DNA of 64,000 nucleotides, taken from positions 124,001 to 188,000 of the IMG/VR virus record IMGVR_UViG_3300046542_000248; one strand, written 5' to 3'. A program made the position numbers and the translations under genes. Within the stretch, counting starts at the first letter, position 1. Each line of letters begins with the position of its first letter. Below, piece after piece: positions 3,859 to 29,324 of this stretch. The notes beneath the pieces are model-generated. The model saw only the letters and a program-made list of their open reading frames with translations. It made no database searches and was not told where the DNA came from.

Positions 3859-6288
3859 TTGACTAAGTATGAGAGGACTGGTAGAAACGTGACAATACGT
3901 ATTCTATGGTATATGAGAAAAGACAAGAATGTCTTCGATTATACTGATGACAAGATTACTGTAAACTACGACGATAGATCCCGAGTTCGTCAATCACCTC
4001 AAGTGTATTTACCAAGTACTGATCTTGATGGTGCAATTCATTTATTCGAAGAAGCATTTGCAAATGACATTGATGAAGTACTAGCGCCGGATTCTTGTGG
4101 GTCTGAAATCATTATTACTTTTGATGAGAAGACTAGTGTGTTTACAATGCAAGACGATGGTCGTGGATTACCTCATGGTAAATTCTTCGATCTGTTAGAA
4201 GTTCTAAGTTCCTCAGGTAAAATGGGAACTACAAACCGTGCCTACAACCATTCAACTGGTGCATTCGGTATGGGTTTCAAATTGATTAACTTCTTCTCGG
4301 TATATATGAAAGTAAGATCCGAGAGAGATGGTAAGTTCATTGATGCATTATATGAAGATGGACTCCGTAAAGAAGTTAAAGAAGGTAAGACAAAATCAAG
4401 TGGTACTTATGTAGAGTGGAAAGTCGATAAACGATTCTTCACCAGCGTAGCTATCACTATTGATCATATCTTAGATAAGATCAAGAAGAAAAGTTTAGTT
4501 GCTGGTGGTTGTACTATCATCTTTAGTGGTAAATCCAAAAAAGGTGAAGAAGTCACTAAAACGTTTAAGAATGGCAAACTTAAAGATCATCTTGCCTCGT
4601 TCAAGGTAGTTCAACCTATCGCTGAATATAAGAGACAGGATGGTAACTCTAAGATTGAATTTGTATTTGGTTATGATCTTGAAACCGATGAGGGTCAAGA
4701 AGTAATTGGCTTTACTAACGGTTCTTACAATAAGATTGGTGGCTCTCATGTTAACGGCTTGATTGAAGGATTTTCTACCTTCATGAGAAAGTATATGATG
4801 GAGTCCTACCTATCTGATAAGGAAAAGAAAGACCTTACGGAAAAAGATAAGAAAGAAATGAGAATTCTTATTGATGACGTTAAAGCAGGTTTAGTAGGGA
4901 TTGTATCAATCTACGCCCTTAATCCTAGCTACAAAGGTCAATATAAAGAAGGACTTGATGATAACAATCTCAAGAACTTCACATTTAACTCTGTTAGAAA
5001 ATATCTGAGAGATCTTGATAAGAACACTATTAACAAGTTTGCTCAGATTATCAAAGCTAACATTAGAGCGCGTGTTGCTGCTGAAAACAGCAAGAAGCGT
5101 ATCAGAAAAGATATTACAAATGCATTTTCACCGGATAAAATCAATGAGTATTTACCAATCTCTAAATTTTCAACGAGTAAGTTTAGAGAGATGTGTATCG
5201 TAGAAGGACTTTCTGCTCGTGGTGGCTTTAAAGCTGTTCGTGATAAGAACCAAATGGCAGTACTTGCAATCAGAGGTAAAGTTGAGAATATCTTTGACCT
5301 TACGCCTGCTGAAGCTGCAAAGCCTGCTAATTCTAAGCTAGTGTCCAATCTCGTTCAGATTTATGAAATCGAAAATGAAAATATCAAGAATTTTGACATT
5401 GAAAAATTCCCATTCGATCGAGTTAATATCGTAACAGATGCTGACTCTGATGGTGGAGAAATCTCTTGTCAATTGGCAATGATCTATGCTAGATTCTTCC
5501 CAGCTATTGTAACATCGGGAAGATTGTTTAAGATTATACCACCTCTTTATGAAGTAAAGGTAAAAGGCGAATCGGTCTTTATCTCTACTGTGCGTGATTA
5601 TGCTAAGTATACTCAAACTAGCTTTATGAAAGCACATAAACTTTTCTTGAATAATAAGGAAATCAAATCCGAAGATCTATTGGACTTCTTGGTTGAGTTC
5701 CATACTTATCAAGATAACTTGCAATACCTATCCAATCAGTACTTGCTAACTCCAGAACTAACTGAGTTCCTGATTAGTAATCTACATGTAGGATTCGAAA
5801 ATCATAAAATTGAAATTTGGAATACCAATATCCTTCCGACTAAATATCGGTTCCTTAAAGCAAGACCAGGCGATAATGGTTATCTGGAAATTGAAGGTAT
5901 GGTTGGTTCCGAATATAATTTGTTCGAATTCACTGATGAATTCATTGAAGATACGGTAGAGCGTTATAAGATTAACCCTGAGGCGCATTTCTATGGATAT
6001 ACCATTGATGGTAAACAGATGAGTTTGTATGAAGTAATGCAAACTGTATCCAAGTATGCTCCTAAAATTGTTACACGTTTTAAAGGATTAGGTGAGATGA
6101 GATCTGCCGATCTTGAAAGAACTATCGTTGACAAATCAGCTCGTCACAGTATTCGATTGACTATGAAGGATATCGAAGATACTTATGAGCGTATGGCAGT
6201 AATGCATTCCAAGAAAAAAGATTATCCGAACAAACGCAAGATCTATATGCGTAACTTCAAGTTCGATATCATGGATGTCGATACTTAA
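3859..6288 (+). CDS. gyrB: Type IIA topoisomerase, GyrB/ParE-like subunit (start may be GTG 3889)
   Basis: GHKL motifs (EEAFANDIDE, DDGRGLP, GAFGMG); TOPRIM motifs EGLSA, IRGK, TDADSDG; RFKGLGEM. Confidence 0.93.
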   Translation: MTKYERTGRNVTIRILWYMRKDKNVFDYTDDKITVNYDDRSRVRQSPQVYLPSTDLDGAIHLFEEAFANDIDEVLAPDSCGSEIIITFDEKTSVFTMQDDGRGLPHGKFFDLLEVLSSSGKMGTTNRAYNHSTGAFGMGFKLINFFSVYMKVRSERDGKFIDALYEDGLRKEVKEGKTKSSGTYVEWKVDKRFFTSVAITIDHILDKIKKKSLVAGGCTIIFSGKSKKGEEVTKTFKNGKLKDHLASFKVVQPIAEYKRQDGNSKIEFVFGYDLETDEGQEVIGFTNGSYNKIGGSHVNGLIEGFSTFMRKYMMESYLSDKEKKDLTEKDKKEMRILIDDVKAGLVGIVSIYALNPSYKGQYKEGLDDNNLKNFTFNSVRKYLRDLDKNTINKFAQIIKANIRARVAAENSKKRIRKDITNAFSPDKINEYLPISKFSTSKFREMCIVEGLSARGGFKAVRDKNQMAVLAIRGKVENIFDLTPAEAAKPANSKLVSNLVQIYEIENENIKNFDIEKFPFDRVNIVTDADSDGGEISCQLAMIYARFFPAIVTSGRLFKIIPPLYEVKVKGESVFISTVRDYAKYTQTSFMKAHKLFLNNKEIKSEDLLDFLVEFHTYQDNLQYLSNQYLLTPELTEFLISNLHVGFENHKIEIWNTNILPTKYRFLKARPGDNGYLEIEGMVGSEYNLFEFTDEFIEDTVERYKINPEAHFYGYTIDGKQMSLYEVMQTVSKYAPKIVTRFKGLGEMRSADLERTIVDKSARHSIRLTMKDIEDTYERMAVMHSKKKDYPNKRKIYMRNFKFDIMDVDT

Positions 6289-6314
6289 AACCCAAATGAG
6301 AGGGCTGATGCCAT

Positions 6315-6590
6315 TTGAAGAATACAAAGCAGTTTAGAATCAAATATTATGATTACGAGGACTCTGAATTGTATACTATCATTCAAATGGCGTCAAGCAA
6401 ATCTCAAGCGATTATACTTGCTGATGCTAGGCTTAGAAAAACTACTAATAATTTTCTTATTTATGAAGAAATGATTACTGAGCTTGATGCACAGCATTAC
6501 ATTAATCAAATTCGCACTAATTTAACTACTTCTATTATGGAGAGGAATGACCCAAGTTGGCTAAGAAGAAGAAAAAGAGTGACGGGTTAA
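6315..6590 (+). CDS. Hypothetical protein
   Basis: GAGAGGG RBS and TTG start, between gyrB and gyrA. Confidence 0.55.
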   Translation: MKNTKQFRIKYYDYEDSELYTIIQMASSKSQAIILADARLRKTTNNFLIYEEMITELDAQHYINQIRTNLTTSIMERNDPSWLRRRKRVTG

Positions 6591-6946
6591 CTAATTTCGA
6601 AATTCAATACAGTAATGCGTCTGGGAGTCATACTGGCACTCAACGTGCAATTGATAAACATGACGCTATTCTGAAATTCAAGCAGCTTAATCCTGGCGTT
6701 AGAATAAAAGATGCCAAGGAAATTCCTAACCCGAATATTGGTCGTGGGATGTCTTCACCAACTTTAATCATTGATGATAGACCTATAGATGCGATCAGCG
6801 ACGGTAATAAACGACTTTATCCGTATGATCAACAAATTGATCCGCAATATAGATCCGATATACCACCAACAATACCCCCTGTAATGATTCTTACTGGGAA
6901 AAAGCCTTATAATGGGCAAATTGAAATTCAGAAGGATGAGATTTAA
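6557..6946 (+). CDS. Hypothetical protein
   Basis: GGAGAGG RBS and TTG start; stop overlaps the gyrA ATG (TAATG). Confidence 0.6.
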   Translation: MAKKKKKSDGLTNFEIQYSNASGSHTGTQRAIDKHDAILKFKQLNPGVRIKDAKEIPNPNIGRGMSSPTLIIDDRPIDAISDGNKRLYPYDQQIDPQYRSDIPPTIPPVMILTGKKPYNGQIEIQKDEI

Positions 6947-9372
6947 TGACTTACATAATCAGACCTAAGAAGGGTTTTTGGAATATCGAAAACATTGATG
7001 AGCAGAACATTGCCCAATTTGATGAAGACGGTATGGCCCTTCATGGTGTAAATAGAAACCTACAAAGAAATATTGCGTTATTCTTTGATAACCTCAAAGT
7101 AGTTCATAGACGTATTCTATATGCTATGGCTACTAAAGGATTGAAACCTACAAGTAATTATTCGAAATCTGCTGGTGTTATTGGTAGAACTATTGAACAG
7201 TTTCATCCTCATGGTGATGCTGCTGCTTATGAAGCTTTAATCTTTATGGGTCAACCATGGAGAAATATTATGACTCTGGTAGATGTCAGCGGAATCTATG
7301 GTAATGCTGAGAATCCAGATGAGTATGCTCAAATGCGTTATGTTGAGTGTAGATTGAACAAATTTGCATGGGACTGCTTCTTCTCCGAATGGGATTTGAA
7401 GTCAGACCTGGTTGATATGCGTCCAACCTTTAATGGTGAAGACTTAGAACCAATTTATCTTCCTGCAAAATATCCTTTATTCTTAATGAACTGGGGTAGT
7501 GGTATGGGCTTTGGATTATCCACATCCAGCCCAGGATTCTTACCTCAAGTTGCAATGCAAGCAGTCATCGACCTTGTTCTAGATCCTAATGCTAAACTTG
7601 TGATGTACCCAGAAGACCCAATGGGCTGTACCATTATAGGTAAGAAGGTATTCCATAAGTTCGTGGATCATGATATGAATAATGATGACGATGAAAGTCT
7701 GAAGTTCCGTGTTCGTTCCGACTATATCATTCAAGATGGTATGATCAGAATCTTAAACACTCCGTATGAAGTAAATCCTGCAACAGTCGCTGCTAAGATT
7801 AAAAAGCTGCGAGAAGAGAAAAAGATTGACGGTATTATAGAAATGGAGATTGACCTGATGGCAGGTAAAATTCCTCAGCATAAAGGCAAAGAGGATGCGA
7901 TGAATATCGTAATTGAATATGCCAAAGGTATTGATCCTCATATTCTAATGGATAAACTTTACAAGCTTACTCAATTGGAAACCACATTCTCACTTAACAC
8001 TGTGTATGTAGACATGAATAGAAATGTGAAGTACAATCTGCGTGAGAGTATTCTTAACTGGATTAAAACCAGAAAGAAAGTCTTAAAGCGGATGTATCGT
8101 AGTGATTTAACAATTAAAGCTAAACGTAATTACATTCTAGATGCTTTGATCGACCTATTCGAAAAGAAGCAACTGGATGACGTTATCGAGCTTTTCAAAA
8201 AGAAAAAACGTGCGGATATTCCTGAAATTCTTATCTCAAGATACGGTGTCAGTGATTTCCAAGCGAAGCAAATTTCAAGATTACAACTTGATCAAATCTC
8301 TCCTGAAGCTTATGCAGAGAATGTTCAAGAGCGTAAAGTTAATAAGGCTAAGATCCAAGAACTTCAAGATATTTTGAAGACTAAAGGATCTCTTAACAAG
8401 ATCATCATCGAACAGATGCAAGAGGGTATTTCTAAGTATTCTCGCCCGCGTCAATCGAAGATTATTGAAGCTAACTTTGGTGATAAAGAAGAAGCATTCT
8501 TTGACATCGAGGTTATTCATTCAGGTAGTATTCGTAAGACTAAAGTCGGTTCAACTATTGAGTTGAACAATGATGAGTCTCTACTCGTTGATAAGCATAT
8601 CAACGTTGGGGATGCTAATAAGCTATTCGTCTTCACAAACAACGGCTTGGTATTCAGCGATAACATTTCTAATATCAAGACCTCCAAAGATTCTAGCCTT
8701 GGAAGTATTATCTCTAAGCGCTATGATTCTACAAAGTATAACACAATCGGATCTCTTGTAGGTAAAGAGTCTAGCACTGCAAATATAATCTGTCTAACTA
8801 AACTTGGACTGATTAAAAACAGTAAGCTTTCTGACTACTTTATCTCATCGCAAGGAAGTTATGGGATCAAGCTTGCTAAGAATGATGAGCTTGTATCTGT
8901 ACTTGAATTCTCCGCTGCTGAAATTAAGAACTCCAAGATTCTCATCTATACCAAGAGTGGTAAATGTGGAATGTTCCCTGTAGATGATCTTACAGTAACT
9001 TCCCGATTCACTATGGGTAATATCGGCATTAAGCTGGAAGATGGAGATTATGTAATCGGAGCTGAGCTTGTTAAGTCTTCCGATGAACAAATGGTCACTG
9101 TCTCTGAGAGTGGTCATATTAAGAAATTCTCTATTGAGAATACGTTTAACAATATGAAGCGTGGCTCTTACGGAGTATCAGTAGTATCTTCAGGTGAAGA
9201 CCTGTATAAGATTGCTACAGTTGGTCCTAAGATCACTAAGCTTCTACTAGTATCTCTTCAAGGAACTGAAGAAGTGGTACTAGCTGATCTGCCGAATAAA
9301 ACAAGACTTTCGTCTGGCGAGAAGGTTCTTAAAGCCAAGCGGAAGAATGAGATTATTCTCAAGGAAAAATAA
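6946..9372 (+). CDS. gyrA: Type IIA topoisomerase, GyrA/ParC-like subunit with beta-pinwheel CTD
   Basis: DNLKVVHRRILYAM, KSA, FHPHGD, catalytic YAQMRY; C-terminal blade repeats (SQGSYGIKL, RFTMGNIGIKL, KRGSYGVSV). Confidence 0.93.
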   Translation: MTYIIRPKKGFWNIENIDEQNIAQFDEDGMALHGVNRNLQRNIALFFDNLKVVHRRILYAMATKGLKPTSNYSKSAGVIGRTIEQFHPHGDAAAYEALIFMGQPWRNIMTLVDVSGIYGNAENPDEYAQMRYVECRLNKFAWDCFFSEWDLKSDLVDMRPTFNGEDLEPIYLPAKYPLFLMNWGSGMGFGLSTSSPGFLPQVAMQAVIDLVLDPNAKLVMYPEDPMGCTIIGKKVFHKFVDHDMNNDDDESLKFRVRSDYIIQDGMIRILNTPYEVNPATVAAKIKKLREEKKIDGIIEMEIDLMAGKIPQHKGKEDAMNIVIEYAKGIDPHILMDKLYKLTQLETTFSLNTVYVDMNRNVKYNLRESILNWIKTRKKVLKRMYRSDLTIKAKRNYILDALIDLFEKKQLDDVIELFKKKKRADIPEILISRYGVSDFQAKQISRLQLDQISPEAYAENVQERKVNKAKIQELQDILKTKGSLNKIIIEQMQEGISKYSRPRQSKIIEANFGDKEEAFFDIEVIHSGSIRKTKVGSTIELNNDESLLVDKHINVGDANKLFVFTNNGLVFSDNISNIKTSKDSSLGSIISKRYDSTKYNTIGSLVGKESSTANIICLTKLGLIKNSKLSDYFISSQGSYGIKLAKNDELVSVLEFSAAEIKNSKILIYTKSGKCGMFPVDDLTVTSRFTMGNIGIKLEDGDYVIGAELVKSSDEQMVTVSESGHIKKFSIENTFNNMKRGSYGVSVVSSGEDLYKIATVGPKITKLLLVSLQGTEEVVLADLPNKTRLSSGEKVLKAKRKNEIILKEK

Positions 9373-9378
9373 CAAATG

Positions 9379-9417
9379 GAGAAGAGGAGAAATCCTCTTC
9401 TCTTCTTATTTTTTTTC
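9379..9417 (+). terminator. Intrinsic terminator (GAAA loop)
   Basis: GAGAAGAGGA-GAAA-TCCTCTTCTC followed by a T tract. Confidence 0.85.
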
Positions 9418-9423
9418 TGCTGA

Positions 9424-9435
9424 AACACACAGATA
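9424..9435 (+). promoter_or_regulatory. Late-type promoter AACA-N6-TA
   Basis: AACA CACAGA TA; matches the AR9 late consensus as recalled and recurs before structural genes. Confidence 0.65.
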
Positions 9436-9445
9436 ATAGACCACT

Positions 9446-10633
9446 GTGAAGGGAATGGTACAATTGTCTGATACTATTATTCTAGATAGTTTGTATAGCA
9501 AAGCAGCTACTGCTTTAAGTAATCCTGCTAATGTAATGAAATTGAAAACCTATTTGTCGAAGTACTTTGATAAGAACTCTCATATTCTTTTTTCTTTAAA
9601 TTTCACTGAACGGCTTATCGTATTTGAAGCTGATAAAGCGATTCTGTTTGAAAGTCTAGGAATCTCTGATAAGGAGATTCAAGCGGTACTAGATAAATCA
9701 CCATTTGGCAAAATCAATTGGGTATTGAATCCTACTACCGTTGCATTACTATTATGTATTCTTTATTTTGATAATAAGAAGTTAGAGAAGGATGTCGAAA
9801 TCTGTGAGATCTTCCTTACTTGCTACTTCTATTCTGTGCTACATCCTAAAATCTTTAACTATCCTCCAAACGCTGCCATCATGGAGTATACGTTAACAAA
9901 GAATCCTAATGTAACAGGAAACTTTATCTTTAAGAAGGAAGGTTCACTGTTCAATTCCTTCAAACATATGTCTAAAATCTCTCATGAGAATTATATCGTT
10001 GATCTTAAGACGTTAAAGACCGATAAGATGGTAAATGATTATGTCGGTTCTATTCGTACTCGTCTTAACTCATTGCTGAAGAATATCATGAACTATTTCC
10101 TTGAAGATCATAAAGCTGGTCATTATTTCAATAGAGAAGCTGATGTGCATGAGGATGATAAATATCGTCTTGCAGATAGCACAACTCTATTCGTTTCTAA
10201 ATTAGCTAGTAAAACCACTACTAATATCATTAGCTATCGCTTTAATAGATCTATTATTAAGCAGACAGCCAATGCTGATATCAATCTACATCCAATCACT
10301 CTTGAAAATATTCTCAATACTATTATTGAGCATTATAGACAAGATGTTGATGCGTTTGTAAGTTCCATTATTGAACTGTATGTAATTGAGGGTAACAATA
10401 ATGCTACCACTATCAATACGTCCAAGTTCATCAATGAATGTTTATACCTGTATAAATCCAATTCCAGTAAGCCACGAGTAGTTTATCTTAAAAATACTTT
10501 GGATAAGTGGATTGCTGAAGGTTCAAAATTAAATGGTCAACGCTTTATTAGAGAAGCTACTATTTACGCATATCGTAAAGCGATCTTCACCATGTTCGTA
10601 TATTCAATCAATAAAGAAAGTCAACCGTCATAA
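9446..10633 (+). CDS. Hypothetical late protein (possibly virion-associated; true start may be TTG ~9464)
   Basis: 395-aa ORF under a late promoter, co-transcribed with an RNAP beta fragment. Confidence 0.65.
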   Translation: MKGMVQLSDTIILDSLYSKAATALSNPANVMKLKTYLSKYFDKNSHILFSLNFTERLIVFEADKAILFESLGISDKEIQAVLDKSPFGKINWVLNPTTVALLLCILYFDNKKLEKDVEICEIFLTCYFYSVLHPKIFNYPPNAAIMEYTLTKNPNVTGNFIFKKEGSLFNSFKHMSKISHENYIVDLKTLKTDKMVNDYVGSIRTRLNSLLKNIMNYFLEDHKAGHYFNREADVHEDDKYRLADSTTLFVSKLASKTTTNIISYRFNRSIIKQTANADINLHPITLENILNTIIEHYRQDVDAFVSSIIELYVIEGNNNATTINTSKFINECLYLYKSNSSKPRVVYLKNTLDKWIAEGSKLNGQRFIREATIYAYRKAIFTMFVYSINKESQPS

Positions 10634-10650
10634 GAAGGGAATGATATCAT

Positions 10651-11382
10651 TTGGCTAAGAAGCACCAAAAGATTCTTAACTATATCTATAAAGCTATTGA
10701 TGCTATAGATCCAACTGGTAAGAATACTGAAAGATATAAACAGCATCTGGATGGAATGTCTGATGATGATTTCAAAAAATGGGCAAAAGATTTCCTTAGA
10801 GATGACAATGATAACTTCACTGCTGAAATGGATCAATTTGATCAGAACGTAACTATTGAACAGCTTGTTCATGCTGGGCAAACTGCAAATGTACTTCTTG
10901 AAGATTACATTGTAATGCCTAGTATTAGTGATGATCCTGATGATCCTTATGTAACTATTGAGAAGGTATTATTACTCTACCTGAATCAACGTCGAGTTCA
11001 ACAGACTCTATCTGTAAAGAACCACGTTTCTACTTCCATTAATAAACGTAACCCTAAAACGGGTCAAGTTATTGATGATGATAAAAACTCAAGAACTTCT
11101 GATATGGAAATGTACCAGTTAATCTTCCAAGGAGCTTTTAATAAGCTTGCAGAAGATTATGGCCCAAAATCAGATAACCTTGTAGCTAAGAATGAAATGC
11201 TCTATCAGATTCAGCGTAAGGGTTCAGTATCATTAGCTGAGCTTCCTAATCTTACAAAAGATAAGGTATCTCTTAACTATATGAACTTCCTACTATTAGC
11301 TGCTGGTTACCAATCCGACTTAATTAACGATAAAGAATTACTACCTATCGTTATTGAGCGTGGTGGTCAATTGTATCAATAA
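10651..11382 (+). CDS. RNA polymerase beta C-terminal fragment, probable virion RNAP subunit
   Basis: YLNQRRVQQ..KN..S...RNPKTGQV....NSRTSDMEMYQL...A...AE..GPKSDN resembles beta region I (YxxKLxH..K..R...TxQP..G..GGxRxGEME..L...A...L.E....KSDD). Confidence 0.75.
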   Translation: MAKKHQKILNYIYKAIDAIDPTGKNTERYKQHLDGMSDDDFKKWAKDFLRDDNDNFTAEMDQFDQNVTIEQLVHAGQTANVLLEDYIVMPSISDDPDDPYVTIEKVLLLYLNQRRVQQTLSVKNHVSTSINKRNPKTGQVIDDDKNSRTSDMEMYQLIFQGAFNKLAEDYGPKSDNLVAKNEMLYQIQRKGSVSLAELPNLTKDKVSLNYMNFLLLAAGYQSDLINDKELLPIVIERGGQLYQ

Positions 11383-21745: not shown

Positions 21746-23950
21746 ATGACGAAGTTTCATAATTTAGCAAAAGGATTAGTTGAGGATTTAAGTAGAGGTA
21801 AGTATCTGTCGGCTGTCGTAGCTTTACAGCATCCCGAGATTATGGTACCCCTTTATGAGATTATCAAGAAGAAACCGAAGGATATTAATGATCGGGAATT
21901 TCAAGGATTAAGAGATGTGATCATTGCAAGTAAAGCTTTATACGAAGCCAATCAGTATATGAGTGGTATTACGTATAAGCTTATGCCCAATGATACTTAT
22001 GATACTTTGATTGAGATTTATAAGGGACTGAAGAATGAAGATGAGCCATTCCAATCCTTTATTCCGAATGGAATGAGAAGTGTTTCTCAAGATTATCCTG
22101 AATTATCAGGTACTCTTGATAAGGCTTATACAATCTATGATCTCAAGGAGAAACCATCTGTAGAAAAATGGATAAGAAAGATCTTTAAAGAGCTTGGAGT
22201 TAAGAAGTTAAAGTTAATGGTGGCTCTAAAGTTCGATGGAACTTCCGTAACTGTTACTTATGAACCAAACCAATTGAAGAAGTTCGATGAGTCTACCTTA
22301 ATTCCTACTAAGGCAATAACTCGTGGAGATTTCGATAATAATCTTGGTGTCGACCTATTCAATATTCTTGTAGGAAGAGATCAATTGGTTATCAATGACG
22401 GTATAAGTGATTGTCTTAACGGTGAAAGAATTGGTGTTCAGTATGAAGCAATGGTTACCGAATATGGTAGAGAGAATCTATCTAAGATTGTTGGTATCAA
22501 CTATTCTACTCGTCGAGCAGCCATTGCAGCAGCCTTAAAACGGATATCTAATCCTAAGACACCACCACTTGAACTTGGTGAGATCAATAAGTGTGTTACA
22601 TTAGTACCTTTAATGATTGATGACAATTCTATTGGTAGATTTAAGAAATCTATGTACTTTGAAACTTTGATGGAAACTATTTCGATGGATTTCTATCGTC
22701 CTGATAGTAAAACCTCATTGGAGTATCGAATTGATTCTATTGATGGAGATATAGACAGTCTTCTCAATAAGTTTCAAGTACTCGTGGATGAATATGTCAA
22801 GAATCGTGCCGATCTAAACTTCAGCATTGATGGTCTAGTATTATCAGTCGCTGATTATAAGCACGTTGATACTCTTGGTCGGTCTAGCAATAAGAACAAG
22901 TGGCAAATTGCTTACAAGTTCGATGCAATGATTCAAAGAACCAAGATCACAGGGATTATTTCATCCATGGGTAAGCAAGGGTTTATCGGACACAATATAA
23001 CCTTTGATCCTATTGAGTTTAATGGGGTAGGATATGTGAAAGCTCCTGTTAATAATGTGACAAGATTCAATACACTTAACCCACATATCGGTGATGAAGT
23101 TCTTGTCTCATATAACGCAGATGTTATGGGTTATATCTACAAGGATGAAACCTGTAAACCTGCACCTGATGGTTTGGCTATTCCAATGCCAACCACATGC
23201 CTTAACTGTGGGTGTGAATTGGCTATTACTAAAGATATGCTTAAGTGTATTAATGATACATGTCCAGGTCATAAGGTAGGAACAATCCTTGAAGCAATTC
23301 GAATCTTTAGTATAGATTACTTTGGGGATGAAACTGCTAATGGTCTAGTGATGGATGCCAATATTTCAGATGTAATATCATTCATTAATATGACAAAGGA
23401 CGATCTTGCAAAAGTTCTTAAAGGACTTAATCTGGAAAAAGCATGGGAAGAATTCAAGAATAAGATTAAAGCACCTATTGAATATTCTAAGGTGATTGAT
23501 CTTCTAAGGATTCCAAATCTCAGAACTAAAACGGCTGAAAAGATTCTTGAAGATATCTCTATCAAAGACCTGAAGCAAATGATGCTGATGAAGGATGAGA
23601 AAGTTCTCTTAAAGGCTCTACAGGCAATTAAAGGTATTGATAAGAAGGCTCATGACTTTGCAATCAATCTGATTGATGCTTATCCTGAATTCTCGAATAT
23701 ATCTAAACTTCTAAATTGTATCGAGCCAGTTAAGCATGAGTATGATAAGAAAGTTCTTATCTCTGGATTCCGAAGCAATGAAAAGTTTGAAGAGATATGT
23801 GAAAGATTAAACTTCGAGATTCTTGAATCAGGTACTAAGGTTGATTTGTTGGTTGTAACGCCTGAGAACTTCAATAAAACAAAGGCAGAGAAAGCAAGGA
23901 AACGTGGTATTCCAATTATGCTTTTGTCTGAATTTATTGAAACGTACTGA
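21746..23950 (+). CDS. ligA: NAD-dependent DNA ligase
   Basis: KFDG adenylation motif, TRGD, IDGLV, WQIAYKF, C4 zinc finger (CLNC...CINDTC), HhH, BRCT-like end. Confidence 0.92.
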   Translation: MTKFHNLAKGLVEDLSRGKYLSAVVALQHPEIMVPLYEIIKKKPKDINDREFQGLRDVIIASKALYEANQYMSGITYKLMPNDTYDTLIEIYKGLKNEDEPFQSFIPNGMRSVSQDYPELSGTLDKAYTIYDLKEKPSVEKWIRKIFKELGVKKLKLMVALKFDGTSVTVTYEPNQLKKFDESTLIPTKAITRGDFDNNLGVDLFNILVGRDQLVINDGISDCLNGERIGVQYEAMVTEYGRENLSKIVGINYSTRRAAIAAALKRISNPKTPPLELGEINKCVTLVPLMIDDNSIGRFKKSMYFETLMETISMDFYRPDSKTSLEYRIDSIDGDIDSLLNKFQVLVDEYVKNRADLNFSIDGLVLSVADYKHVDTLGRSSNKNKWQIAYKFDAMIQRTKITGIISSMGKQGFIGHNITFDPIEFNGVGYVKAPVNNVTRFNTLNPHIGDEVLVSYNADVMGYIYKDETCKPAPDGLAIPMPTTCLNCGCELAITKDMLKCINDTCPGHKVGTILEAIRIFSIDYFGDETANGLVMDANISDVISFINMTKDDLAKVLKGLNLEKAWEEFKNKIKAPIEYSKVIDLLRIPNLRTKTAEKILEDISIKDLKQMMLMKDEKVLLKALQAIKGIDKKAHDFAINLIDAYPEFSNISKLLNCIEPVKHEYDKKVLISGFRSNEKFEEICERLNFEILESGTKVDLLVVTPENFNKTKAEKARKRGIPIMLLSEFIETY

Positions 23951-23981
23951 GCATCTTTAAATTAAAAAAGTAAATATTCTA

Positions 23982-23993
23982 AACATTAAATTG
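23982..23993 (+). promoter_or_regulatory. Late-type promoter AACA-N6-TG
   Basis: AACA TTAAAT TG at the start of an intergenic region with no + strand ORF. Confidence 0.6.
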
Positions 23994-24342
23994 GGAGAAT
24001 TTTAGAGTACACAAGTAATCACCACTCAACCATTTATGTTGATCGTCGTGTCCAAACCGTTCTCTCTTTGAAAACCTAATACTTCAAATCATTTCGCCCA
24101 TATACAGGAATGATCATAGCGACCTTTACTCGGAATTTTCTGCTGGATTCACCTATCAAGTTTGGTTGAATTAAATCGCAGAAGGTGAAGAGATCCTTGC
24201 TGAAGTTATTAGAAAGAGAGAATACATAGGTAGACGTTATATCATTTATCAAAGTGGACGTATTCACTTAGTTACCAATATTCTCATAACCATACAACGA
24301 ACCAGGGGTCAATGCGATCTCTGGTTCGTTCCTTATTTTTTT
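23993..24342 (+). ncRNA. Putative structured non-coding RNA (~300 nt plus terminator), family unknown
   Basis: Nested helices 23995-24000/24280-24285, 24005-24010/24260-24265, 24050-24054/24255-24259, 24060-24069/24213-24222, 24076-24086/24201-24212, 24138-24143/24178-24183; promoter upstream and terminator at 24296-24342. Confidence 0.6.
24296..24342 (+). terminator. Intrinsic terminator
   Basis: AACGAACCAGGG...CTCTGGTTCGTT followed by a T tract. Confidence 0.75.
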
Positions 24343-24367
24343 GTCAAAATGAATCGAATATGAAACC

Positions 24368-24381
24368 AAATATATATTATT
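24368..24381 (+). promoter_or_regulatory. Early-type promoter motif
   Basis: AAATATATATTATT. Confidence 0.75.
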
Positions 24382-24424
24382 ATAGTGTATATAGAACAAT
24401 ACTATCGAGGAGAGTGTATCTAAT

Positions 24425-25042
24425 TTGTCAAAACCATTTGGAGATTTAACACGAGAAGGCGTAAACACACTGTTTAACTGTACGTCAGCAAAACATGGCG
24501 GCAATATTGACATCAATTCAGAAGTTCAAGGATTTATTGATACTGGTGTCTCAAAAGGTATTACACATACCTTAAACCCTTTACTGGGGCAAGGTCCAGA
24601 TAAGCGTTTGGTACTCGGTCCATTCACATATGGGCACGGTGTATTCATGCTTACTGATGAGCAAGGATTCTTTGATAATATCGAAGAATATAAAAAAGAG
24701 CCTAGACTAAATCTAGCTCTGGTTGAGTTGATCGCTGAAAGTATTAGAAGCGATAGCAATGAAATATTTTATGAAGCAGCACATAATTACGCTAAGCTAA
24801 GTGAATATGATGCTGAGACACGCATCTGGACTGAGCAGCCGAATGAAGAAGATCGTGGTGTAGAGTTGGATTCATCCTCTCTATATCTGCTTGCAGCTGT
24901 ACATGTATTGGCAATTGCGCATATGTTACTGCGTTCCGCTAATAAAGAAGAAGCTTCACTAGTTGAAATACCAGGTGAGGGAATCTATACCATTGAGTGG
25001 GTTGACGACCAGTGGGCAATCGGGTTTACTCTCACCCAGTAA
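24425..25042 (+). CDS. Acidic protein, paralog of 25133..25837 (possible HU/IHF-like fold)
   Basis: Shared motifs IDTG, GPFTYG, DRGVE, VEIPGEG.YTIE; GAGGAG RBS; TTG start. Confidence 0.7.
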   Translation: MSKPFGDLTREGVNTLFNCTSAKHGGNIDINSEVQGFIDTGVSKGITHTLNPLLGQGPDKRLVLGPFTYGHGVFMLTDEQGFFDNIEEYKKEPRLNLALVELIAESIRSDSNEIFYEAAHNYAKLSEYDAETRIWTEQPNEEDRGVELDSSSLYLLAAVHVLAIAHMLLRSANKEEASLVEIPGEGIYTIEWVDDQWAIGFTLTQ

Positions 25043-25132
25043 ATATATATAATTATAGTGTATATGACACAATATTAGAAGTATCTAGTGTGTCAAAAAA
25101 TCAAACTACAAATTATTAGGAGGATTTTAACA

Positions 25133-25837
25133 ATGGCTAAAAAACTTATCGAGGTAACAAACGAAGTATCCAGCAAAGCATTTAACTGTGAACGCAACAT
25201 TGACGGTGACAATAAAAAGGCCGAAATTGATATCGCAATTCAAGCAATGATCGACACTGGTATCTCCAATGCAATTCCACGTGCTCTGTTCCTTATCATG
25301 GACGCTGAGCCGAAAGAAGAAGTACAATTGGTTGTAGGGCCGTTCACATACGGTGTAACTGCTCGTAAATCCGGCGAATCCTTATCATTGAATCCAACGT
25401 TCACGTTGACGAACGAAAAGAAATTCTTGGCTGAGCTTGACAATTTCGAAGAGAAGCTGCACAAGAACGTTTCCCTTATCGAAAGCATTGCAACAACTAT
25501 CGACGACGAAGTGTTCCTTGATACTGTTATGCACTGCTGCAAATTGGATGAATACGATGTGGCTGAAAGCGAATGGATTGAAAAGAAAACTGACGCTGAC
25601 CGTGGCGTTGAATTTGATCAAACTTCTTCGCAGCTATTCGTTGCATTACACATCTCCGCAATCATCCATGTCTTGGTTAACTCCAAGTCTCCGGATGAAG
25701 TAGTTAAATATGAAGTACCGGGCGAAGGTACGTATACGATCGAGCGTAAAAAGGACAAATGGGAATTCGGATTCATTCCATCCAAAGAGTTCAAACAAAC
25801 GATCAAAAACGACCGTCTTATCGAAGCCCTCGTCTAA
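25133..25837 (+). CDS. Acidic, probably highly expressed protein with two HU/IHF-like segments
   Basis: AGGAGG RBS; EVPGEGTYTIER...FGFIPSKEFKQTIK resembles HU VQLxGFGTFEV...PAFKPGKxLKxxV; own promoter variant at 25041-25054. Confidence 0.7.
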   Translation: MAKKLIEVTNEVSSKAFNCERNIDGDNKKAEIDIAIQAMIDTGISNAIPRALFLIMDAEPKEEVQLVVGPFTYGVTARKSGESLSLNPTFTLTNEKKFLAELDNFEEKLHKNVSLIESIATTIDDEVFLDTVMHCCKLDEYDVAESEWIEKKTDADRGVEFDQTSSQLFVALHISAIIHVLVNSKSPDEVVKYEVPGEGTYTIERKKDKWEFGFIPSKEFKQTIKNDRLIEALV

Positions 25838-25926
25838 TTATCCTTTATCAAATAGGCCGAACCGGAAACTTATCCGGTTCGGTTCTTACTATTTGTCAAA
25901 ATTTTTTGTAAGGTGGGAGAATATAT

Positions 25927-26101
25927 CATGGAAGAAACTCAGCGTTCCGTTAGCTGTAAAAGCTGCAATTCAACTTCTTGGATTTCAGCAACACCTCTTG
26001 GTAGAAGAAATTATCAAAAGTTTAAATGTAAATGCAGGAAAACTGTTCGTATTCTCACTTTAAAATGGGGGAAGACATTACAGTTTAGTTCAAAGTTATA
26101 A
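25927..26101 (+). CDS. Small Cys-rich (Zn-ribbon) hypothetical protein
   Basis: CKSC...CKC; GGGAG RBS; start is ATG ~25928 or GTG 25913. Confidence 0.45.
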
Positions 26102-26132: not shown

Positions 26133-28004
26133 ATGAATTATCTAAGCCAGATGGTCGCTAAAATGTCTGACACCATGGTTGATGGTATTAATGAAGATCT
26201 GTTTGACCGCCGGAAAGGGAAACAAATCTGGGAATTTATCGCTGAAGATTTAAGATCAGTAGAAATGTTACCTGATATATTCCTGAAGAATGTTCAATAT
26301 ATAAAGGACCCGTCTAAACTTGATGTTCGTTTGAACCTGAAGAATATTAAGAATAAGAAGATTCTCAAGAATAAAATTGAGAAGCTTATTCCAGTACAGC
26401 CTGATGTATTCGATGCTATTCGATTTACTGTGGATATTGCCGGTGGTCAGAAAGTAGAGAATACTATTCTGCTTCCGAAATATATAGATAGATACAACTT
26501 CATGATCTCTGGGAATAAAACTTTAGCTATGTTCCAGGTTGTAGATAACGCAACTTACAACCGCAAAGGTGAAGTAATCCTTAAATCCAGAATCCAGAAA
26601 CGTCTTAGCAGAGAAGAGAAGAAAAAGAAATATGAGCTTCTCTGTGTTGAGACAGGCAACCTTTACAAGATCAGTAATTTAAATATCAATCTATTCAAGA
26701 AGACTTTCAATCCGTTATACTACTTTGCGGCTAGAAGATCTATTCTTGGAACGATTGATTTCTTTGGATATACAAAGTTTCTTAATCTAGTTACAGAAGT
26801 TAAGCAGCCTGAATTGTTCTATTACTTCCGTATCAATTCTAACATTCTTTTCGAGTGTGAAAAGACGTTGTTTGATGATGACGGATTCTTTAGAACTTTC
26901 ACAGGATTACTTGCTCAGCTATTCAATACTCGTAACAAGATTGAAGATATTTATGAAGAAGAACTTTGGGTCAAGAAACTTGGCACGCTATTCACATCAG
27001 CGGCTAAGAATCAATTGAACAAAGGTTACGATGTTATGAAGTCATTCCGAAACGTTCTGGACACCACAACTCAGAATGCTTTACGGATTGATTACAAAGA
27101 CAAAGCTGATATCTACTGTGTATTACGGTGGATGATGCGAGAGTTCAATGAGTTGAGAAATATGGATAACAACTCCTTGGCTAATAAACGTATTCGTACT
27201 AATGAATATATTGCTGCATACTTTGCACGGTATTGGAAAGATAAAGTTAACTACGCTTTGAATCTGAAGCCGTATGATAAAGACAAGCTTGCACGGATCT
27301 TCAAGGTTGATGAGCACATTCTTATCAAAGCCTTGTTCCGTGGTAAGAAGCCATCTCCACTATTCCGTTACAATATTGATATCAATGATCTTCAAGCATT
27401 GAACGGATTGAAATTCTCACTCACAGGTATTCAAGGTCTGCCATCCGATAAAGTTAAGGATGAACAACGGGATATCTATCCGAGTCATCTTGGACGGTTC
27501 GAGCTTAATGCTATCTCGTCCAGTTCACCAGGTATCTCCGGTATGCTTACTCCATTCTGTAAGATTTATGATGGAGGATACTTCGGAGATTCTCAAGCAA
27601 TCGAGAAGCCTTATATCAAGAAGCTTCGTAAGAGAATCAAAGAGATTAAAACTAATGAGGGTGTATATAATGTGATTAGAGCGCATTATAAAACTCTTGA
27701 GGAAGATCATGAGAAGAGAAGATTCAATCTCAAGTATCGTGAACTTCGAAATGAACGTGGCTTTATCCAGATCGTAAGACCTAGATATATTCGTAATGAG
27801 CGAGGATATATTCGAGTTGATAAGGTGATTAATCCTGCGAGTTACAAACGTACTCCTAAAGGATATATCAAAGTCAACAGAAACTTTGTTCTATTGCGAC
27901 TTACTGCTAGTGTTAAACCTGAATTTAAACAAGGTTCGTATGTTAGAACTCCTGATGGCTATATTGGAATTACAATTAATCCAAACGGTCTATTTAAGAA
28001 ATAA
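26133..28004 (+). CDS. RNA polymerase beta N-terminal half, probable non-virion RNAP subunit, with C-terminal repeats
   Basis: LPK...FMISGN, LANKRIR, fork/Rif region RDIYPSHLGRF....SSSSPGISGMLTPF. Confidence 0.85.
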   Translation: MNYLSQMVAKMSDTMVDGINEDLFDRRKGKQIWEFIAEDLRSVEMLPDIFLKNVQYIKDPSKLDVRLNLKNIKNKKILKNKIEKLIPVQPDVFDAIRFTVDIAGGQKVENTILLPKYIDRYNFMISGNKTLAMFQVVDNATYNRKGEVILKSRIQKRLSREEKKKKYELLCVETGNLYKISNLNINLFKKTFNPLYYFAARRSILGTIDFFGYTKFLNLVTEVKQPELFYYFRINSNILFECEKTLFDDDGFFRTFTGLLAQLFNTRNKIEDIYEEELWVKKLGTLFTSAAKNQLNKGYDVMKSFRNVLDTTTQNALRIDYKDKADIYCVLRWMMREFNELRNMDNNSLANKRIRTNEYIAAYFARYWKDKVNYALNLKPYDKDKLARIFKVDEHILIKALFRGKKPSPLFRYNIDINDLQALNGLKFSLTGIQGLPSDKVKDEQRDIYPSHLGRFELNAISSSSPGISGMLTPFCKIYDGGYFGDSQAIEKPYIKKLRKRIKEIKTNEGVYNVIRAHYKTLEEDHEKRRFNLKYRELRNERGFIQIVRPRYIRNERGYIRVDKVINPASYKRTPKGYIKVNRNFVLLRLTASVKPEFKQGSYVRTPDGYIGITINPNGLFKK

Positions 28005-28018
28005 ACTGGAGGTAGTAT

Positions 28019-28660
28019 ATGCTACGTATAACAAAAGTTACACTTATAAGGCCAGAGGATCAACCTCTGGCTTTAAAGTCGCTTAGTAAAAAGCATAAGA
28101 AAATCCTTAAAGATTTAACTCACAGAATGAAACGTGATGCTTTGGCTAAAGATTGTACAGGCTTCACTAATCCTAATGAGAAGAACATTGTTCTTATGGG
28201 AGATCCTGATGAATACACCACTGTAAAAGGTCATGTTACTGATGATCATTTAGCGGATTTTGATTATCACCATGGTGAAGGTGCAAAATTCATTCTAGTT
28301 AATATAGGTCGTGGAATGTATAAGAAGCTTTCATTGAAAGCCTATGAAAAATTGTCCAAGATTCTATATATGACTGTACGAGTTAAAGCAACTGTATTAA
28401 CAGATGGTGACGGTGAGAATGATAATGATTATGAAACCGTCATGGATGACACATACAATGTCGCATCATTAAATTATCTATTCGGTATAATACCTCGTAT
28501 AGAAGGTGTCATTGATGGGCGTTCTGCTTTCCAGAGAAGTCAAGAAGGCTGGAATACAATCAATGAAACTGATATTACTGTGAAGATTCTTAATAAGAGT
28601 GGAAGTGTAGAAGTTCATACACTCCATAAGTTTCTAGACAAGTATAAACTATTCTACTAA
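28019..28660 (+). CDS. Hypothetical protein
   Basis: GGAGG RBS. Confidence 0.7.
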   Translation: MLRITKVTLIRPEDQPLALKSLSKKHKKILKDLTHRMKRDALAKDCTGFTNPNEKNIVLMGDPDEYTTVKGHVTDDHLADFDYHHGEGAKFILVNIGRGMYKKLSLKAYEKLSKILYMTVRVKATVLTDGDGENDNDYETVMDDTYNVASLNYLFGIIPRIEGVIDGRSAFQRSQEGWNTINETDITVKILNKSGSVEVHTLHKFLDKYKLFY

Positions 28661-28673
28661 TGGAGGTATTCAA

Positions 28674-29324
28674 ATGAAAAGATCTGATATTGATAGTATT
28701 TGTGTCGGTGATAAATTTAAAGATGATCAAGGGGTACTATTTAAGATTAGAACGTTTCATGGTAGTAGACATGTTTGGTGTGAATGCTGCGAACATCCTG
28801 ATCCTGAACGTCCTTATCCTTTAGACCATTATGATTGCTATTTCTTACGTGATAAAACATTACTAGATCGAATCAATGATTATCATGATGAAATTACAAT
28901 GGCTGTCGGTGCGTCTACTGCTATACCATATGAAGCTAATCTTATTCTTAAACTTATCATACCACATAGTGAGAATCCTAATCCTATGAGGATTGAAATG
29001 CTTAAGAAAGCAAATAAAAATCTAGATATTCTTAAAGGTATCTTTACTCCTATGCCGGATGAAAGTGAAGGAATGAAGAAAATAATAAGAAAAGGTCTTT
29101 TAACCATCAAGATGGATGGCGATCCTGATCCGGATAATTATATCTTCCAAGGTGAAACGGAAATTATATTGAATAATGACTTCCAACTTGAAAAAACCTG
29201 GAATGGTGACGATACAGAATCCATAATTCCTCCTGATGTGGCTTTAAAAGCTTGTCAACAGGTTGATCAAGAGATTTTTGATTTTATGAAAAAGAATGAA
29301 ACAGAAAAAGCCCAAGAGGAGTAA
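28674..29324 (+). CDS. Hypothetical protein
   Basis: GGAGG RBS; N-terminal Cys/His cluster. Confidence 0.7.
   Translation: MKRSDIDSICVGDKFKDDQGVLFKIRTFHGSRHVWCECCEHPDPERPYPLDHYDCYFLRDKTLLDRINDYHDEITMAVGASTAIPYEANLILKLIIPHSENPNPMRIEMLKKANKNLDILKGIFTPMPDESEGMKKIIRKGLLTIKMDGDPDPDNYIFQGETEIILNNDFQLEKTWNGDDTESIIPPDVALKACQQVDQEIFDFMKKNETEKAQEE

What the first reader, a model, noticed from the sequence alone, without database searches (positions are those of the whole stretch)
24425..25837. Duplicated acidic proteins resembling armless, single-chain HU/IHF pseudo-dimers
Seen in sequence: two clear paralogs, each behind its own early promoter; the second has codon usage like the capsid gene. Each seems to hold two HU-like units: helix plus EEVQLVVGPFTYGV...LNPTF, and helix plus KYEVPGEGTYTIE...FGFIPSKEFKQTIK, versus HU KVQLxGFGTFEV...PAFKPGKxLK. 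The DNA-binding arm (GRNP) is absent and the proteins are acidic. Inference: a nucleoid-protein mimic or HU-sequestering factor, or an atypical phage chromatin protein.
Basis: inference. Interest (0 to 1): 0.6.

Follow-up and report, generated by a model that had tools for sequence, protein, structure and literature searches.

The report
Armless tandem-HU proteins of jumbo phage
Two neighbouring early genes of an uncultured 247-kb phage encode acidic proteins that each fuse two copies of the bacterial chromosome-packaging HU fold but have lost its DNA-gripping arms; this is an undescribed phage branch of that superfamily, and what it does is still unknown.

Summary
ORF1 (24425-25042, 205 aa) and ORF2 (25133-25837, 234 aa) are paralogs (35% identity, E 1e-43) and acidic (pI 4.55 and 4.77). 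Each follows an AR9-type early promoter, exact for ORF1 and one mismatch for ORF2. ORF2 ranks 3rd of 231 ORFs by GC3, above the major head gene.

The fold reading is supported. Two independent AlphaFold models (pLDDT 88 and 95) show two repeated helix / helix / three-strand units. Both return the same top solved chains: ciliary microtubule-inner-protein chains, one identified from papers as a CCDC81 tandem-HU domain and the others inferred to be; single-chain IHF; then HU, IHF, Hbb and pA104R for single halves. A profile comparison aligns the C half to HU (probability 64%, above 40 of 40 shuffled controls) with a 16-residue gap at the arm. The N half is marginal.

About 36 clusters in 1.8 billion representatives belong to the family. 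None matches Pfam or PHROGs, and no GenBank phage has it. The gene always sits before the non-virion RNA polymerase beta-N gene, where cultured kin carry a canonical HU. ORF2 evolves as slowly as RNA polymerase (dN/dS 0.05). ORF1-type copies evolve fast and vary from none to three extra.

Function is inferred only: most likely a protein-binding or decoy module rather than a DNA-wrapping HU.

The parts
24296..24330 (+). Terminator-like hairpin that closes the upstream unit; left border of the two-gene cassette
   Evidence: 15-pair stem, 7 GC pairs, T-rich tail
24368..24387 (+). Early (virion RNA polymerase type) promoter of ORF1: AAATATATATTAT, 6 nt, G(+1) at 24387; exact AR9 consensus
   Evidence: Sequence; genome-wide motif scan; AR9 consensus from PMC5312081 and the AR9 record's promoter features
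24425..25042 (+). ORF1: 205-aa fast-evolving short paralog (TTG start, pI 4.55). Tandem HU-like fold. The N-unit hairpin is cut to 4-residue strands and the C-terminal helix is missing
25041..25060 (+). Early-promoter-like motif of ORF2: AAATATATATAAT (one mismatch), 6 nt, G(+1) at 25060; overlaps the ORF1 stop codon
   Evidence: Orthologs in L006, L009 and others carry the exact core motif at the same place
25065..25095 (+). 5'UTR stem-loop starting 5 nt after the predicted +1 of ORF2 (-10.3 kcal/mol, z -3.7); probable mRNA stabiliser
   Evidence: equivalent hairpins with different sequences in L004, L006, L008 and L009
25133..25837 (+). ORF2: 234-aa conserved paralog (ATG start, RBS AGGAGG at 25118-23, pI 4.77). 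Two HU-like units (about 1-107 and 108-234), each with an extra hairpin between helix 1 and helix 2 and a truncated arm. The C-terminal K218/K221/K225 align with HU K83/K86/K90
25855..25884 (+). Intrinsic-terminator-like hairpin after ORF2; separates it from the RNA polymerase gene
   Evidence: 12 pairs, 7 GC pairs, T-rich tail
26133..28004 (+). Context: non-virion RNA polymerase beta subunit, N-terminal piece. It is the invariant downstream neighbour of the family
21746..23950 (+). Context: NAD-dependent DNA ligase, the usual upstream neighbour of the slot

Best explanation
ORF1 and ORF2 belong to an undescribed, phage-only branch of the HU/IHF superfamily. In this branch two HU domains are fused in one chain to form an intramolecular HU dimer. 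The DNA-embracing beta-hairpin arms are cut back, the basic clasp is lost, and the surface is acidic.

The conserved copy (ORF2) is a core gene of a clade of AR9/PBS1-related jumbo phages. It is transcribed from an early promoter of the type read by the virion RNA polymerase. Its mRNA has a 5' stem-loop, a strong RBS and its own terminator, and it is probably one of the most abundant phage proteins. It occupies the genomic slot where cultured relatives keep a canonical basic HU, and this genome has no canonical HU.

Inferred mechanism: the protein no longer wraps DNA as HU does. Instead it uses the rigid HU-dimer body as a binding module for proteins, or as a negatively charged decoy for DNA-binding proteins. 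This parallels what Burroughs et al. predicted for the eukaryotic tandem-HU domain of CCDC81, which has since been found as a protein-bound ciliary microtubule inner protein. The extra upstream copies (ORF1 type) are rapidly diversifying derivatives, probably aimed at variable partners, most likely host ones.

Shown: paralogy, acidity, promoter motif, codon bias, synteny, evolutionary rates, predicted fold and its matches.

Inferred: expression level, loss of DNA wrapping, and protein binding or decoy action.

For: Sequence. In hhalign against a profile of 86 HU sequences, the C half scores 28.9 (probability 64%, P 6.7e-5), against a maximum of 15.3 in 40 column-shuffled controls, with a 16-residue gap at the arm. 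The family HMM's best hits among the slot proteins of cultured kin are their HUs: BpSp gp181 at E 1.7e-4 and AR9 g103 at E 1e-3.

Loss of the clasp. The arm segments carry a net charge of +0.3 and +0.5 on average, and 30 of 33 members have pI below 5.6.

Early and abundant.. ORF2's dS of 1.37 against about 3 for neighbouring genes points to codon constraint.

Core gene. The same slot is kept in every locus examined that extends past the gene, down to 24% identity. ORF2 identity tracks the RNA polymerase pieces (90 vs 88%, 82 vs 76-78%, 56 vs 59-61%), and dN/dS is 0.05.

Fast paralogs. The ORF1 positional ortholog is 34% identical in a genome whose ORF2 is 90% identical, with dN 0.63 against 0.069. 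Copy number ranges from 1 to 4.

This genome has no PF00216 hit.

Against: The N half matches HU only marginally by sequence: 1 of 40 shuffled controls reaches its score. The two halves are not significantly alike.

The models rest on shallow alignments of 15 and 28 sequences.

For the function there is no direct evidence at all. Strong purifying selection on ORF2 fits a phage-internal role better than a host decoy. Three lysines homologous to HU K83/K86/K90 are kept in ORF2-type members, so some nucleic-acid contact is not excluded.
Confidence: 0.5

Rival explanations
1. It is still a nucleic-acid-associated architectural protein: the functional successor of the phage's lost canonical HU. It would bind phage DNA, possibly modified DNA or RNA, through the remaining beta-saddle and the C-terminal lysine triad. 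The acidic body would keep it soluble or recruit other factors.
For: Cultured kin have a canonical HU in the same slot (AR9 g103, BpSp gp181, LPJP1_176), and this genome has none. K218/K221/K225 align with HU K83/K86/K90 and are nearly invariant in the close family. Core-gene conservation and high expression fit a housekeeping chromatin-like role. Precedent from general knowledge: abundant phage DNA-binding proteins such as SPO1 TF1 and phi29 p6.
Against: Net charge is -15 and -18, and the family is acidic throughout. The arm regions are near neutral, against about 8 basic residues in the HU clasp. The arms are truncated in both units. ORF1 lacks the lysine tail altogether.
Confidence: 0.25
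2. It is an accessory factor of the phage's non-virion RNA polymerase or of early-to-late transcription switching, encoded next to the beta-N subunit gene.
For: It is the invariant immediate upstream neighbour of the beta-N gene in every locus examined that extends past the gene. Its evolutionary rate equals that of the RNA polymerase pieces. It is an early gene, like the AR9 non-virion polymerase genes.
Against: It has its own promoter and terminator. Its GC3 rank of 3 is far above the neighbouring polymerase gene (0.468 vs 0.363), which suggests large excess over polymerase. Gene neighbourhood alone is weak evidence. No HU-like subunit is known in the AR9 or phiKZ polymerases (my knowledge of the published structures).
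Confidence: 0.1
3. The HU resemblance is convergent or a modelling artefact. The family would then be an unrelated alpha+beta protein with an internal pseudo-repeat.
Against: Two independent models return the same HU-superfamily set, and each half separately returns HU monomers at rmsd 2.2-3.2 A. The C-half profile match is well above all controls and in structural register, with the gap exactly at the arm. The GxG-type turn is kept. The syntenic HU genes of relatives are the HMM's best hits.
Confidence: 0.12

Closest known systems
Classical HU/IHF proteins (Pfam Bac_DNA_binding PF00216), including the phage HUs AR9 g103 and BpSp gp181 and SPO1 TF1
   Same: Each half has the order helix 1, helix 2, strand 1, GxG-type turn, strands 2 and 3, and a C-terminal helix with a K-x-x-K-x-x-x-K motif. 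The two units pack like an HU dimer (match to single-chain IHF). The gene occupies the same genomic slot as the HU of cultured relatives.
   Different: It is one chain of 205-234 aa instead of two of about 90-99 aa. An extra beta-hairpin sits between helix 1 and helix 2 of each unit. The arms are truncated (16-residue gap at R-N-P) with no basic clasp. The pI is about 4.6-4.8 instead of about 9.4. There is no hit to PF00216.
HU-CCDC81 clade (Burroughs et al. 2017, PMC5499826); the CCDC81 domains of ciliary microtubule inner proteins (Tetrahymena CCDC81B, IJ34)
   Different: No sequence match to any Pfam model in hmmscan. The hosts are phages rather than eukaryotes or Bacteroidota. The protein is a stand-alone 23-26 kDa protein, strongly acidic, with extra hairpins. 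A direct relationship as against parallel evolution was not tested.
Engineered single-chain IHF (scIHF2, PDB 2iif)
   Different: scIHF is man-made, with one subunit inserted into the other, and keeps full arms and DNA bending. The phage protein is a natural head-to-tail fusion without arms.
Acidic early phage decoys and DNA mimics (PBS1/AR9 Ugi, T7 Ocr, SPO1 Gp46)
   Same: Small, very acidic, early and highly expressed. In AR9, Ugi is the early gene immediately before the beta-N polymerase gene, the position ORF2 holds here.
   Different: The fold is unrelated. There is no sequence similarity to Ugi. The phage probably does not use uracil DNA. No target is known. ORF2 is far more conserved than typical takeover genes.

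Membership tests
HU/IHF superfamily (IHF-like fold) | Unit topology of two helices, a three-stranded sheet and a C-terminal helix; two units intertwined as a dimer | tested here: met
   DSSP of the models. Single-chain IHF matches both halves. HU (3rhi_A: rmsd 2.8 A over 74 residues, and 2.2 A over 64) and IHF-alpha (rmsd 3.2 A over 77) match single halves. These are predicted models, not solved structures.
HU/IHF superfamily (IHF-like fold) | Significant sequence or profile match to Bac_DNA_binding (PF00216) | tested here: inconclusive
   hmmscan gives no hit at E <= 1 for ORF1 or ORF2, or at E <= 0.1 for the 33 members. In hhalign the C half has probability 64% and score 28.9 against at most 15.3 in 40 shuffles; the N half has probability 12%, matched by 1 of 40 shuffles. 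The family HMM hits phage HUs at E 1.7e-4 and 1e-3 in a 13-protein set.
HU/IHF superfamily (IHF-like fold) | GxG turn between strand 1 and the hairpin | tested here: met
   GPFTYG (G69 invariant; P70 and F71 nearly so) and PGEGTYT (E198, G199 and Y201 invariant in the 18-sequence alignment) align with HU GFGTF.
Classical HU/IHF (DNA-bending proteins) | Long beta-hairpin arms with the R-N-P tip that inserts into the minor groove | tested here: not met
   There is a 16-residue gap at HU 56-71 in the C half, and gaps of 8 and 4 residues in the N half. The hairpins are 22 and 18 residues in ORF2, and 10 and 18 in ORF1.
Classical HU/IHF (DNA-bending proteins) | Basic protein with a lysine- and arginine-rich clasp | tested here: not met
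   pI 4.55 and 4.77. Mean net charge of the arm segments is +0.3 and +0.5 across 33 members, against about 8 basic residues in classical clasps.
Classical HU/IHF (DNA-bending proteins) | Binds and bends DNA | not testable with these tools
   Needs EMSA, FRET or a co-structure.
HU-CCDC81 tandem clade | Two HU domains in one polypeptide with truncated hairpin tips and loss of basic contacts | tested here: met
   The family definition is from PMC5499826.
HU-CCDC81 tandem clade | Structural match to a solved CCDC81 domain | tested here: met
   [not shown]
HU-CCDC81 tandem clade | Sequence membership in Pfam's HU-CCDC81 models | tested here: not met
   No such model is among the hits at E <= 0.1 for any of the 33 members. 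A profile-profile test against CCDC81 was not run because no CCDC81 sequences were at hand.
DNA-mimic decoys (Ugi / Ocr / Gp46 type) | Small, strongly acidic, early-expressed protein | tested here: met
DNA-mimic decoys (Ugi / Ocr / Gp46 type) | Carboxylate pattern that mimics a DNA backbone, and binding to a DNA-binding protein | not tested

The most novel reading that the evidence does not exclude
A clade of uncultured AR9-related jumbo phages has turned its own HU into an abundant, early, acidic single-chain 'anti-HU'. The HU-dimer body would act as a decoy or adaptor that sequesters host DNA-binding or defence proteins, or organises a phage-specific replication and transcription compartment. 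An adjoining array of fast-evolving copies would track variable host targets. This would be the first viral case of the HU fold recruited for protein binding, parallel to eukaryotic CCDC81.
Probability: 0.25. Interest if true: 0.75.

Novelty: new variant of a known kind. Interest (0 to 1): 0.6.

Why it matters
HU/IHF is the textbook bacterial DNA-wrapping fold. The only described natural single-chain, arm-truncated versions are the CCDC81 clade of eukaryotes and Bacteroidota.

Here a virus has made the same design independently, or inherited it. It made that protein a core gene, probably among the most highly expressed early genes, and dropped the canonical HU that its cultured relatives keep in that slot.

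The family has about 36 clusters in 1.8 billion representatives. It has no Pfam or PHROG model and no cultured phage carries it, so it is currently annotated only as hypothetical.

It offers a clean system for asking what an HU body does once it stops binding DNA. It also gives a marker gene and a promoter-UTR cassette for this jumbo-phage clade, and a candidate for a new host-takeover or genome-organising mechanism in phages that encode multisubunit RNA polymerases.

Tried and rejected
- Pfam and PHROGs scans of ORF1, ORF2 and all 33 family members gave nothing meaningful. The weak CshA_repeat hit is below its cut-off and is caused by the PGEGTYT motif.
- blastn and tblastn against 50,697 GenBank phages with ORF2 and two distant members gave no match.
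- HMMER with the family profile against PDB sequences gave nothing relevant.
- Foldseek against the PDB gave no hit at E <= 0.001 for either model. BFVD gave only two uncharacterised Myoviridae proteins. The Atlas feature search gave no usable hit.
- hhalign of the N half against the C half was not significant (E 0.31), although the alignment is colinear.
- Complex prediction of ORF2 with two copies of Bacillus subtilis HBsu returned no verdict. It is neither support nor evidence against, and controls were not run.
- The idea that ORF2 is a Ugi analogue, because Ugi holds the same position in AR9, is weakened. There is no Ugi similarity. The genome has a ThyX-like and a dUTPase-family gene that AR9 lacks, so uracil DNA is unlikely.
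- The idea that the 474-nt gap before ORF1 is a decayed third paralog or a known RNA found no HMM signal and no Rfam hit.
- The three approximately 260-aa genes before the polymerase gene in Bacillus phage BpSp, and AR9 g100, are not detectably related to the family.
- RNAalifold on the 5'UTRs gave no consensus because the alignment was poor. The hairpins were seen only by folding each UTR alone.

Full report
**Where the window lies**

The window is bases 124001-188000 of a 246.9-kb IMG/VR virus record that CheckV rates complete. The gene after the finding (26133-28004) is the N-terminal piece of a non-virion multisubunit RNA polymerase beta subunit. Its nearest cultured relatives, at 25-32% identity, are Bacillus phages AR9, PBS1 and BpSp, Listeria phage LPJP1, Staphylococcus jumbo phages and Yersinia phiR1-37. 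The phage is therefore an uncultured, distant member of the AR9-like jumbo phages.

**Checking the observation**

- ORF1 is 24425-25042 (TTG start, RBS GAGGAGAG, 205 aa).
- ORF2's longest frame starts at 25088. The true start is ATG 25133, behind AGGAGG, giving 234 aa; every ortholog begins there.
- The two are paralogs (35% identity, E 1e-43) and the only copies in the genome.
- Both are acidic: pI 4.55 and 4.77, net charge -18 and -15.
- The 13-mer shared upstream of both genes is part of a longer signal. ORF1 is preceded by AAATATATATTAT-(6N)-G at 24368-24387. This is letter for letter the AR9 early promoter consensus, which is read by the injected virion RNA polymerase (PMC5312081; AR9 record features).
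- ORF2 has the same motif with one mismatch at 25041-25060. Its orthologs carry the exact core.
- The core TATATATTAT occurs 44 times in the genome. 43 copies are intergenic, and most lie 19-160 nt upstream of a gene start on the same strand.
- Terminator-like hairpins flank the cassette at 24296-24330 and 25855-25884.
- ORF2's GC3 is 0.468, third of 231 ORFs and above the major head gene (0.418; identified). ORF1 ranks 53rd.

All elements of the observation are confirmed.

**The fold**

AlphaFold2 with the ortholog alignment gives a confident ORF2 model (pLDDT 88.4, pTM 0.87). It contains two repeated units. Each unit has a helix, a short hairpin, a long helix, three strands and a short helix. 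A separate model of ORF1, built from a different alignment, is even more confident (pLDDT 94.7, pTM 0.91). It has the same plan, but its N-unit hairpin is reduced to four-residue strands and it lacks the last helix.

Foldseek finds nothing in the PDB. The exhaustive VIA search returns the same six top chains for both models:

|---|---|---|
| 8v3l_A | 8.2 | 7.0 |
| 9io5_R | 7.7 | 6.3 |
| 8snb_1K | 7.5 | 6.5 |
| 9e2g_2N | 7.2 | 5.5 |
| 2iif_A (engineered single-chain IHF, aligned across both halves) | 6.3 | 5.4 |
| 8g2z_0T | 5.7 | 4.6 |

After these the scores drop to about 4. HU, IHF-alpha, Hbb, Mycoplasma HU, ASFV pA104R and a Bacteroides HU-like protein then match one half or the other at rmsd 2.2-3.6 A.

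The microtubule-inner-protein chains make sense once identified. By its title, 8v3l is the entry of the DomainFit paper. Of its two new proteins, chain A (1218 aa, matched at 7-212) fits the multi-domain CCDC81B, whose CCDC81 domain is residues 38-218. The 8g2z model includes the CCDC81 homolog IJ34. Burroughs et al. 2017 showed that CCDC81 is a tandem pair of HU domains in one chain, with truncated hairpin tips and few basic residues. I could not verify the chain identities of 8snb_1K and 9e2g_2N. 9io5_R is probably the globular domain of GliD, whose fold nobody has called HU-like. The top ESM Atlas match by shape is an HU family cluster.

**Sequence-level test**

I built an HU profile of 86 distinct sequences and a 33-member family alignment from the exhaustive profile search.

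- The C half aligns to HU residues 15-90 over 60 columns, with probability 64% and P 6.7e-5. A 16-residue gap falls exactly at the arm. F214-K225 pairs with HU F79-K90, so K218, K221 and K225 correspond to HU K83, K86 and K90. The score of 28.9 exceeds all 40 column-shuffled controls (maximum 15.3) and the reversed profile (11.0).
- The N half aligns in the same register, but its score (20.5) is reached by one of the 40 controls, so it is marginal.
- The two halves are not significantly similar to each other.
- No Pfam model, HU or HU-CCDC81 included, is hit by any member.

My reading is as follows. Homology to the HU superfamily is well supported for the C unit. For the N unit it rests on structure only. 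I put the whole tandem-HU reading at about 85%.

**Family and context**

The word search finds 13 orthologs of ORF2 at 54-90% identity and none of ORF1. The exhaustive search of 1.84 billion representatives finds 42 clusters at E <= 0.001. About 36 of them are 190-280 aa; the rest are long repeat proteins that hit only the PGEGTYT-like motif. IMG/VR holds 8 further contigs with close orthologs. No GenBank phage has a match.

In every locus I examined that extends past the gene, it lies immediately upstream of the beta-N polymerase gene, usually after the NAD-dependent ligase. This holds even for members at 24% identity. Copy number varies:

- one copy in L006, L007 and L009;
- two in the window, L003, L004 and L134;
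- two adjacent genes in L127 (the relationship of the second, 233-aa gene was not checked);
- four in L128.

Rates differ sharply between the two kinds of copy. Against the phage of L134, ORF2 is 90% identical, the polymerase pieces 88%, the ligase 64% and a virion protein 77%. The positional ortholog of ORF1 (P0028) is only 34% identical, although it shares ORF1's short architecture. ORF2 has dN/dS 0.05. ORF1's dN is nine times higher. ORF2's dS (1.37) is less than half that of its neighbours, as expected for a codon-constrained, highly expressed gene.

**The AR9 comparison**

In AR9 the stretch between the ligase and the beta-N polymerase gene contains a canonical basic HU (g103, opposite strand). 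It also contains the acidic uracil-DNA glycosylase inhibitor Ugi (g104), which sits directly before the polymerase gene behind an early promoter.

BpSp and LPJP1 also keep a canonical HU of about 98 aa there. Among 13 proteins of these slots, the family HMM's best hits are those HUs (E 1.7e-4 and 1e-3). The window's genome has no PF00216 gene and no Ugi. So the tandem, armless, acidic protein stands where relatives have an ordinary HU.

The Ugi parallel is positional only. The genome carries a ThyX-like gene and a dUTPase-family gene that AR9 lacks, so uracil DNA is unlikely.

**How it probably works**

Across the family, 30 of 33 members have pI below 5.6. The negative charge concentrates in the helices and the inserted hairpin of the C unit. 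The truncated arms are nearly neutral. Classical DNA wrapping by basic arms is therefore lost, as argued for CCDC81.

The expression signals are an early consensus promoter, a 5' stem-loop kept in orthologs with different sequences, a strong RBS, an own terminator and top-3 codon bias. Together they point to an abundant early protein.

I commit, at about 50% for the whole statement, to an HU-dimer body reused as a protein-binding or decoy module. The fast, variable ORF1-type copies would be diversified derivatives aimed at variable partners, probably host ones.

Against a pure host-decoy role for ORF2 stands its polymerase-like conservation, which fits a phage-internal partner. Against a complete loss of nucleic-acid contact stands the retained lysine triad.

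The rivals are:

- a non-classical DNA or RNA architectural protein (0.25);
- a polymerase accessory factor (0.1);
- a convergent or artefactual resemblance (0.12).

The one complex job, ORF2 with a Bacillus HU dimer, gave no verdict and counts for nothing either way.

**Verdict**

Its structural interpretation is supported and its functional guesses remain open.

This is a new variant of a known kind: a phage clade of single-chain, arm-truncated, acidic HU-superfamily proteins, absent from Pfam, PHROGs and cultured phages. Interest 0.6.

Noticed in passing
window 23951-24424: A 474-nt stretch between the ligase stop and ORF1 has no + strand ORF of 46 aa or more and ends in a terminator-like hairpin (24296-24330). 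Relatives L006, L007 and L009 have 550-620 nt without a called gene at the same place. It could be a small RNA or a short peptide gene.
   Followed up: partly
whole genome G000; in the window for example at 892, 3190, 12651, 21002, 21696, 24371 and 49155: The AR9 early promoter consensus AAATATATATTAT-(6N)-G is used by this distant relative too. The core TATATATTAT has 44 exact copies, 43 of them intergenic and on the strand of the downstream gene. The virion RNA polymerase promoter is thus conserved across phages whose polymerase pieces share only about 30% identity.
   Followed up: partly
window 25065-25095; L004, L006, L008, L009 upstream of the ortholog: A stable stem-loop starts 1-6 nt after the predicted transcription start of ORF2 and of four orthologs. 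The sequences differ but the position is the same (z -3.3 to -4.4). It is probably a 5' mRNA stabiliser. RNAalifold could not align the UTRs.
   Followed up: partly
window 53868-55073 and G000:C1:36884-37426: There is a ThyX-like gene (Thy1 domain, E 7e-17) and a dUTPase-family frame that may be a dCTP deaminase. AR9 has neither. The phage probably does not carry uracil DNA like AR9/PBS1; a thymine derivative is possible.
   Followed up: partly
window 25913-26101: A small Cys-rich ORF (CxxC ... CxC, up to 62 aa) lies between ORF2's terminator and the polymerase beta-N gene. A 55-aa gene is called at the same spot in L003. It may be a zinc-ribbon protein.
   Followed up: no
L128 (same contig as L008) 6001-10926: This relative has four family members in a row between the ligase and the polymerase gene (248, 250, 255 and 234 aa), interleaved with unrelated genes of 68, 215 and 185 aa. 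It is a local gene-family expansion.
   Followed up: partly
L136 2934-3242; L137 2861-3247: A gene with an Acb2/Tad1-hairpin domain (anti-CBASS/Thoeris sponge family) lies just after the polymerase beta-N gene in a distant relative. The equivalent window genes (28019-28660 and 28674-29324) have no family match.
   Followed up: no
L138 649-3022 (Bacillus phage BpSp gp182-gp184): Three mutually related genes of about 260 aa fill the slot before the polymerase gene in BpSp, next to its HU. They are not detectably related to the tandem-HU family and their function is unknown.
   Followed up: partly
[not shown]
   Followed up: no
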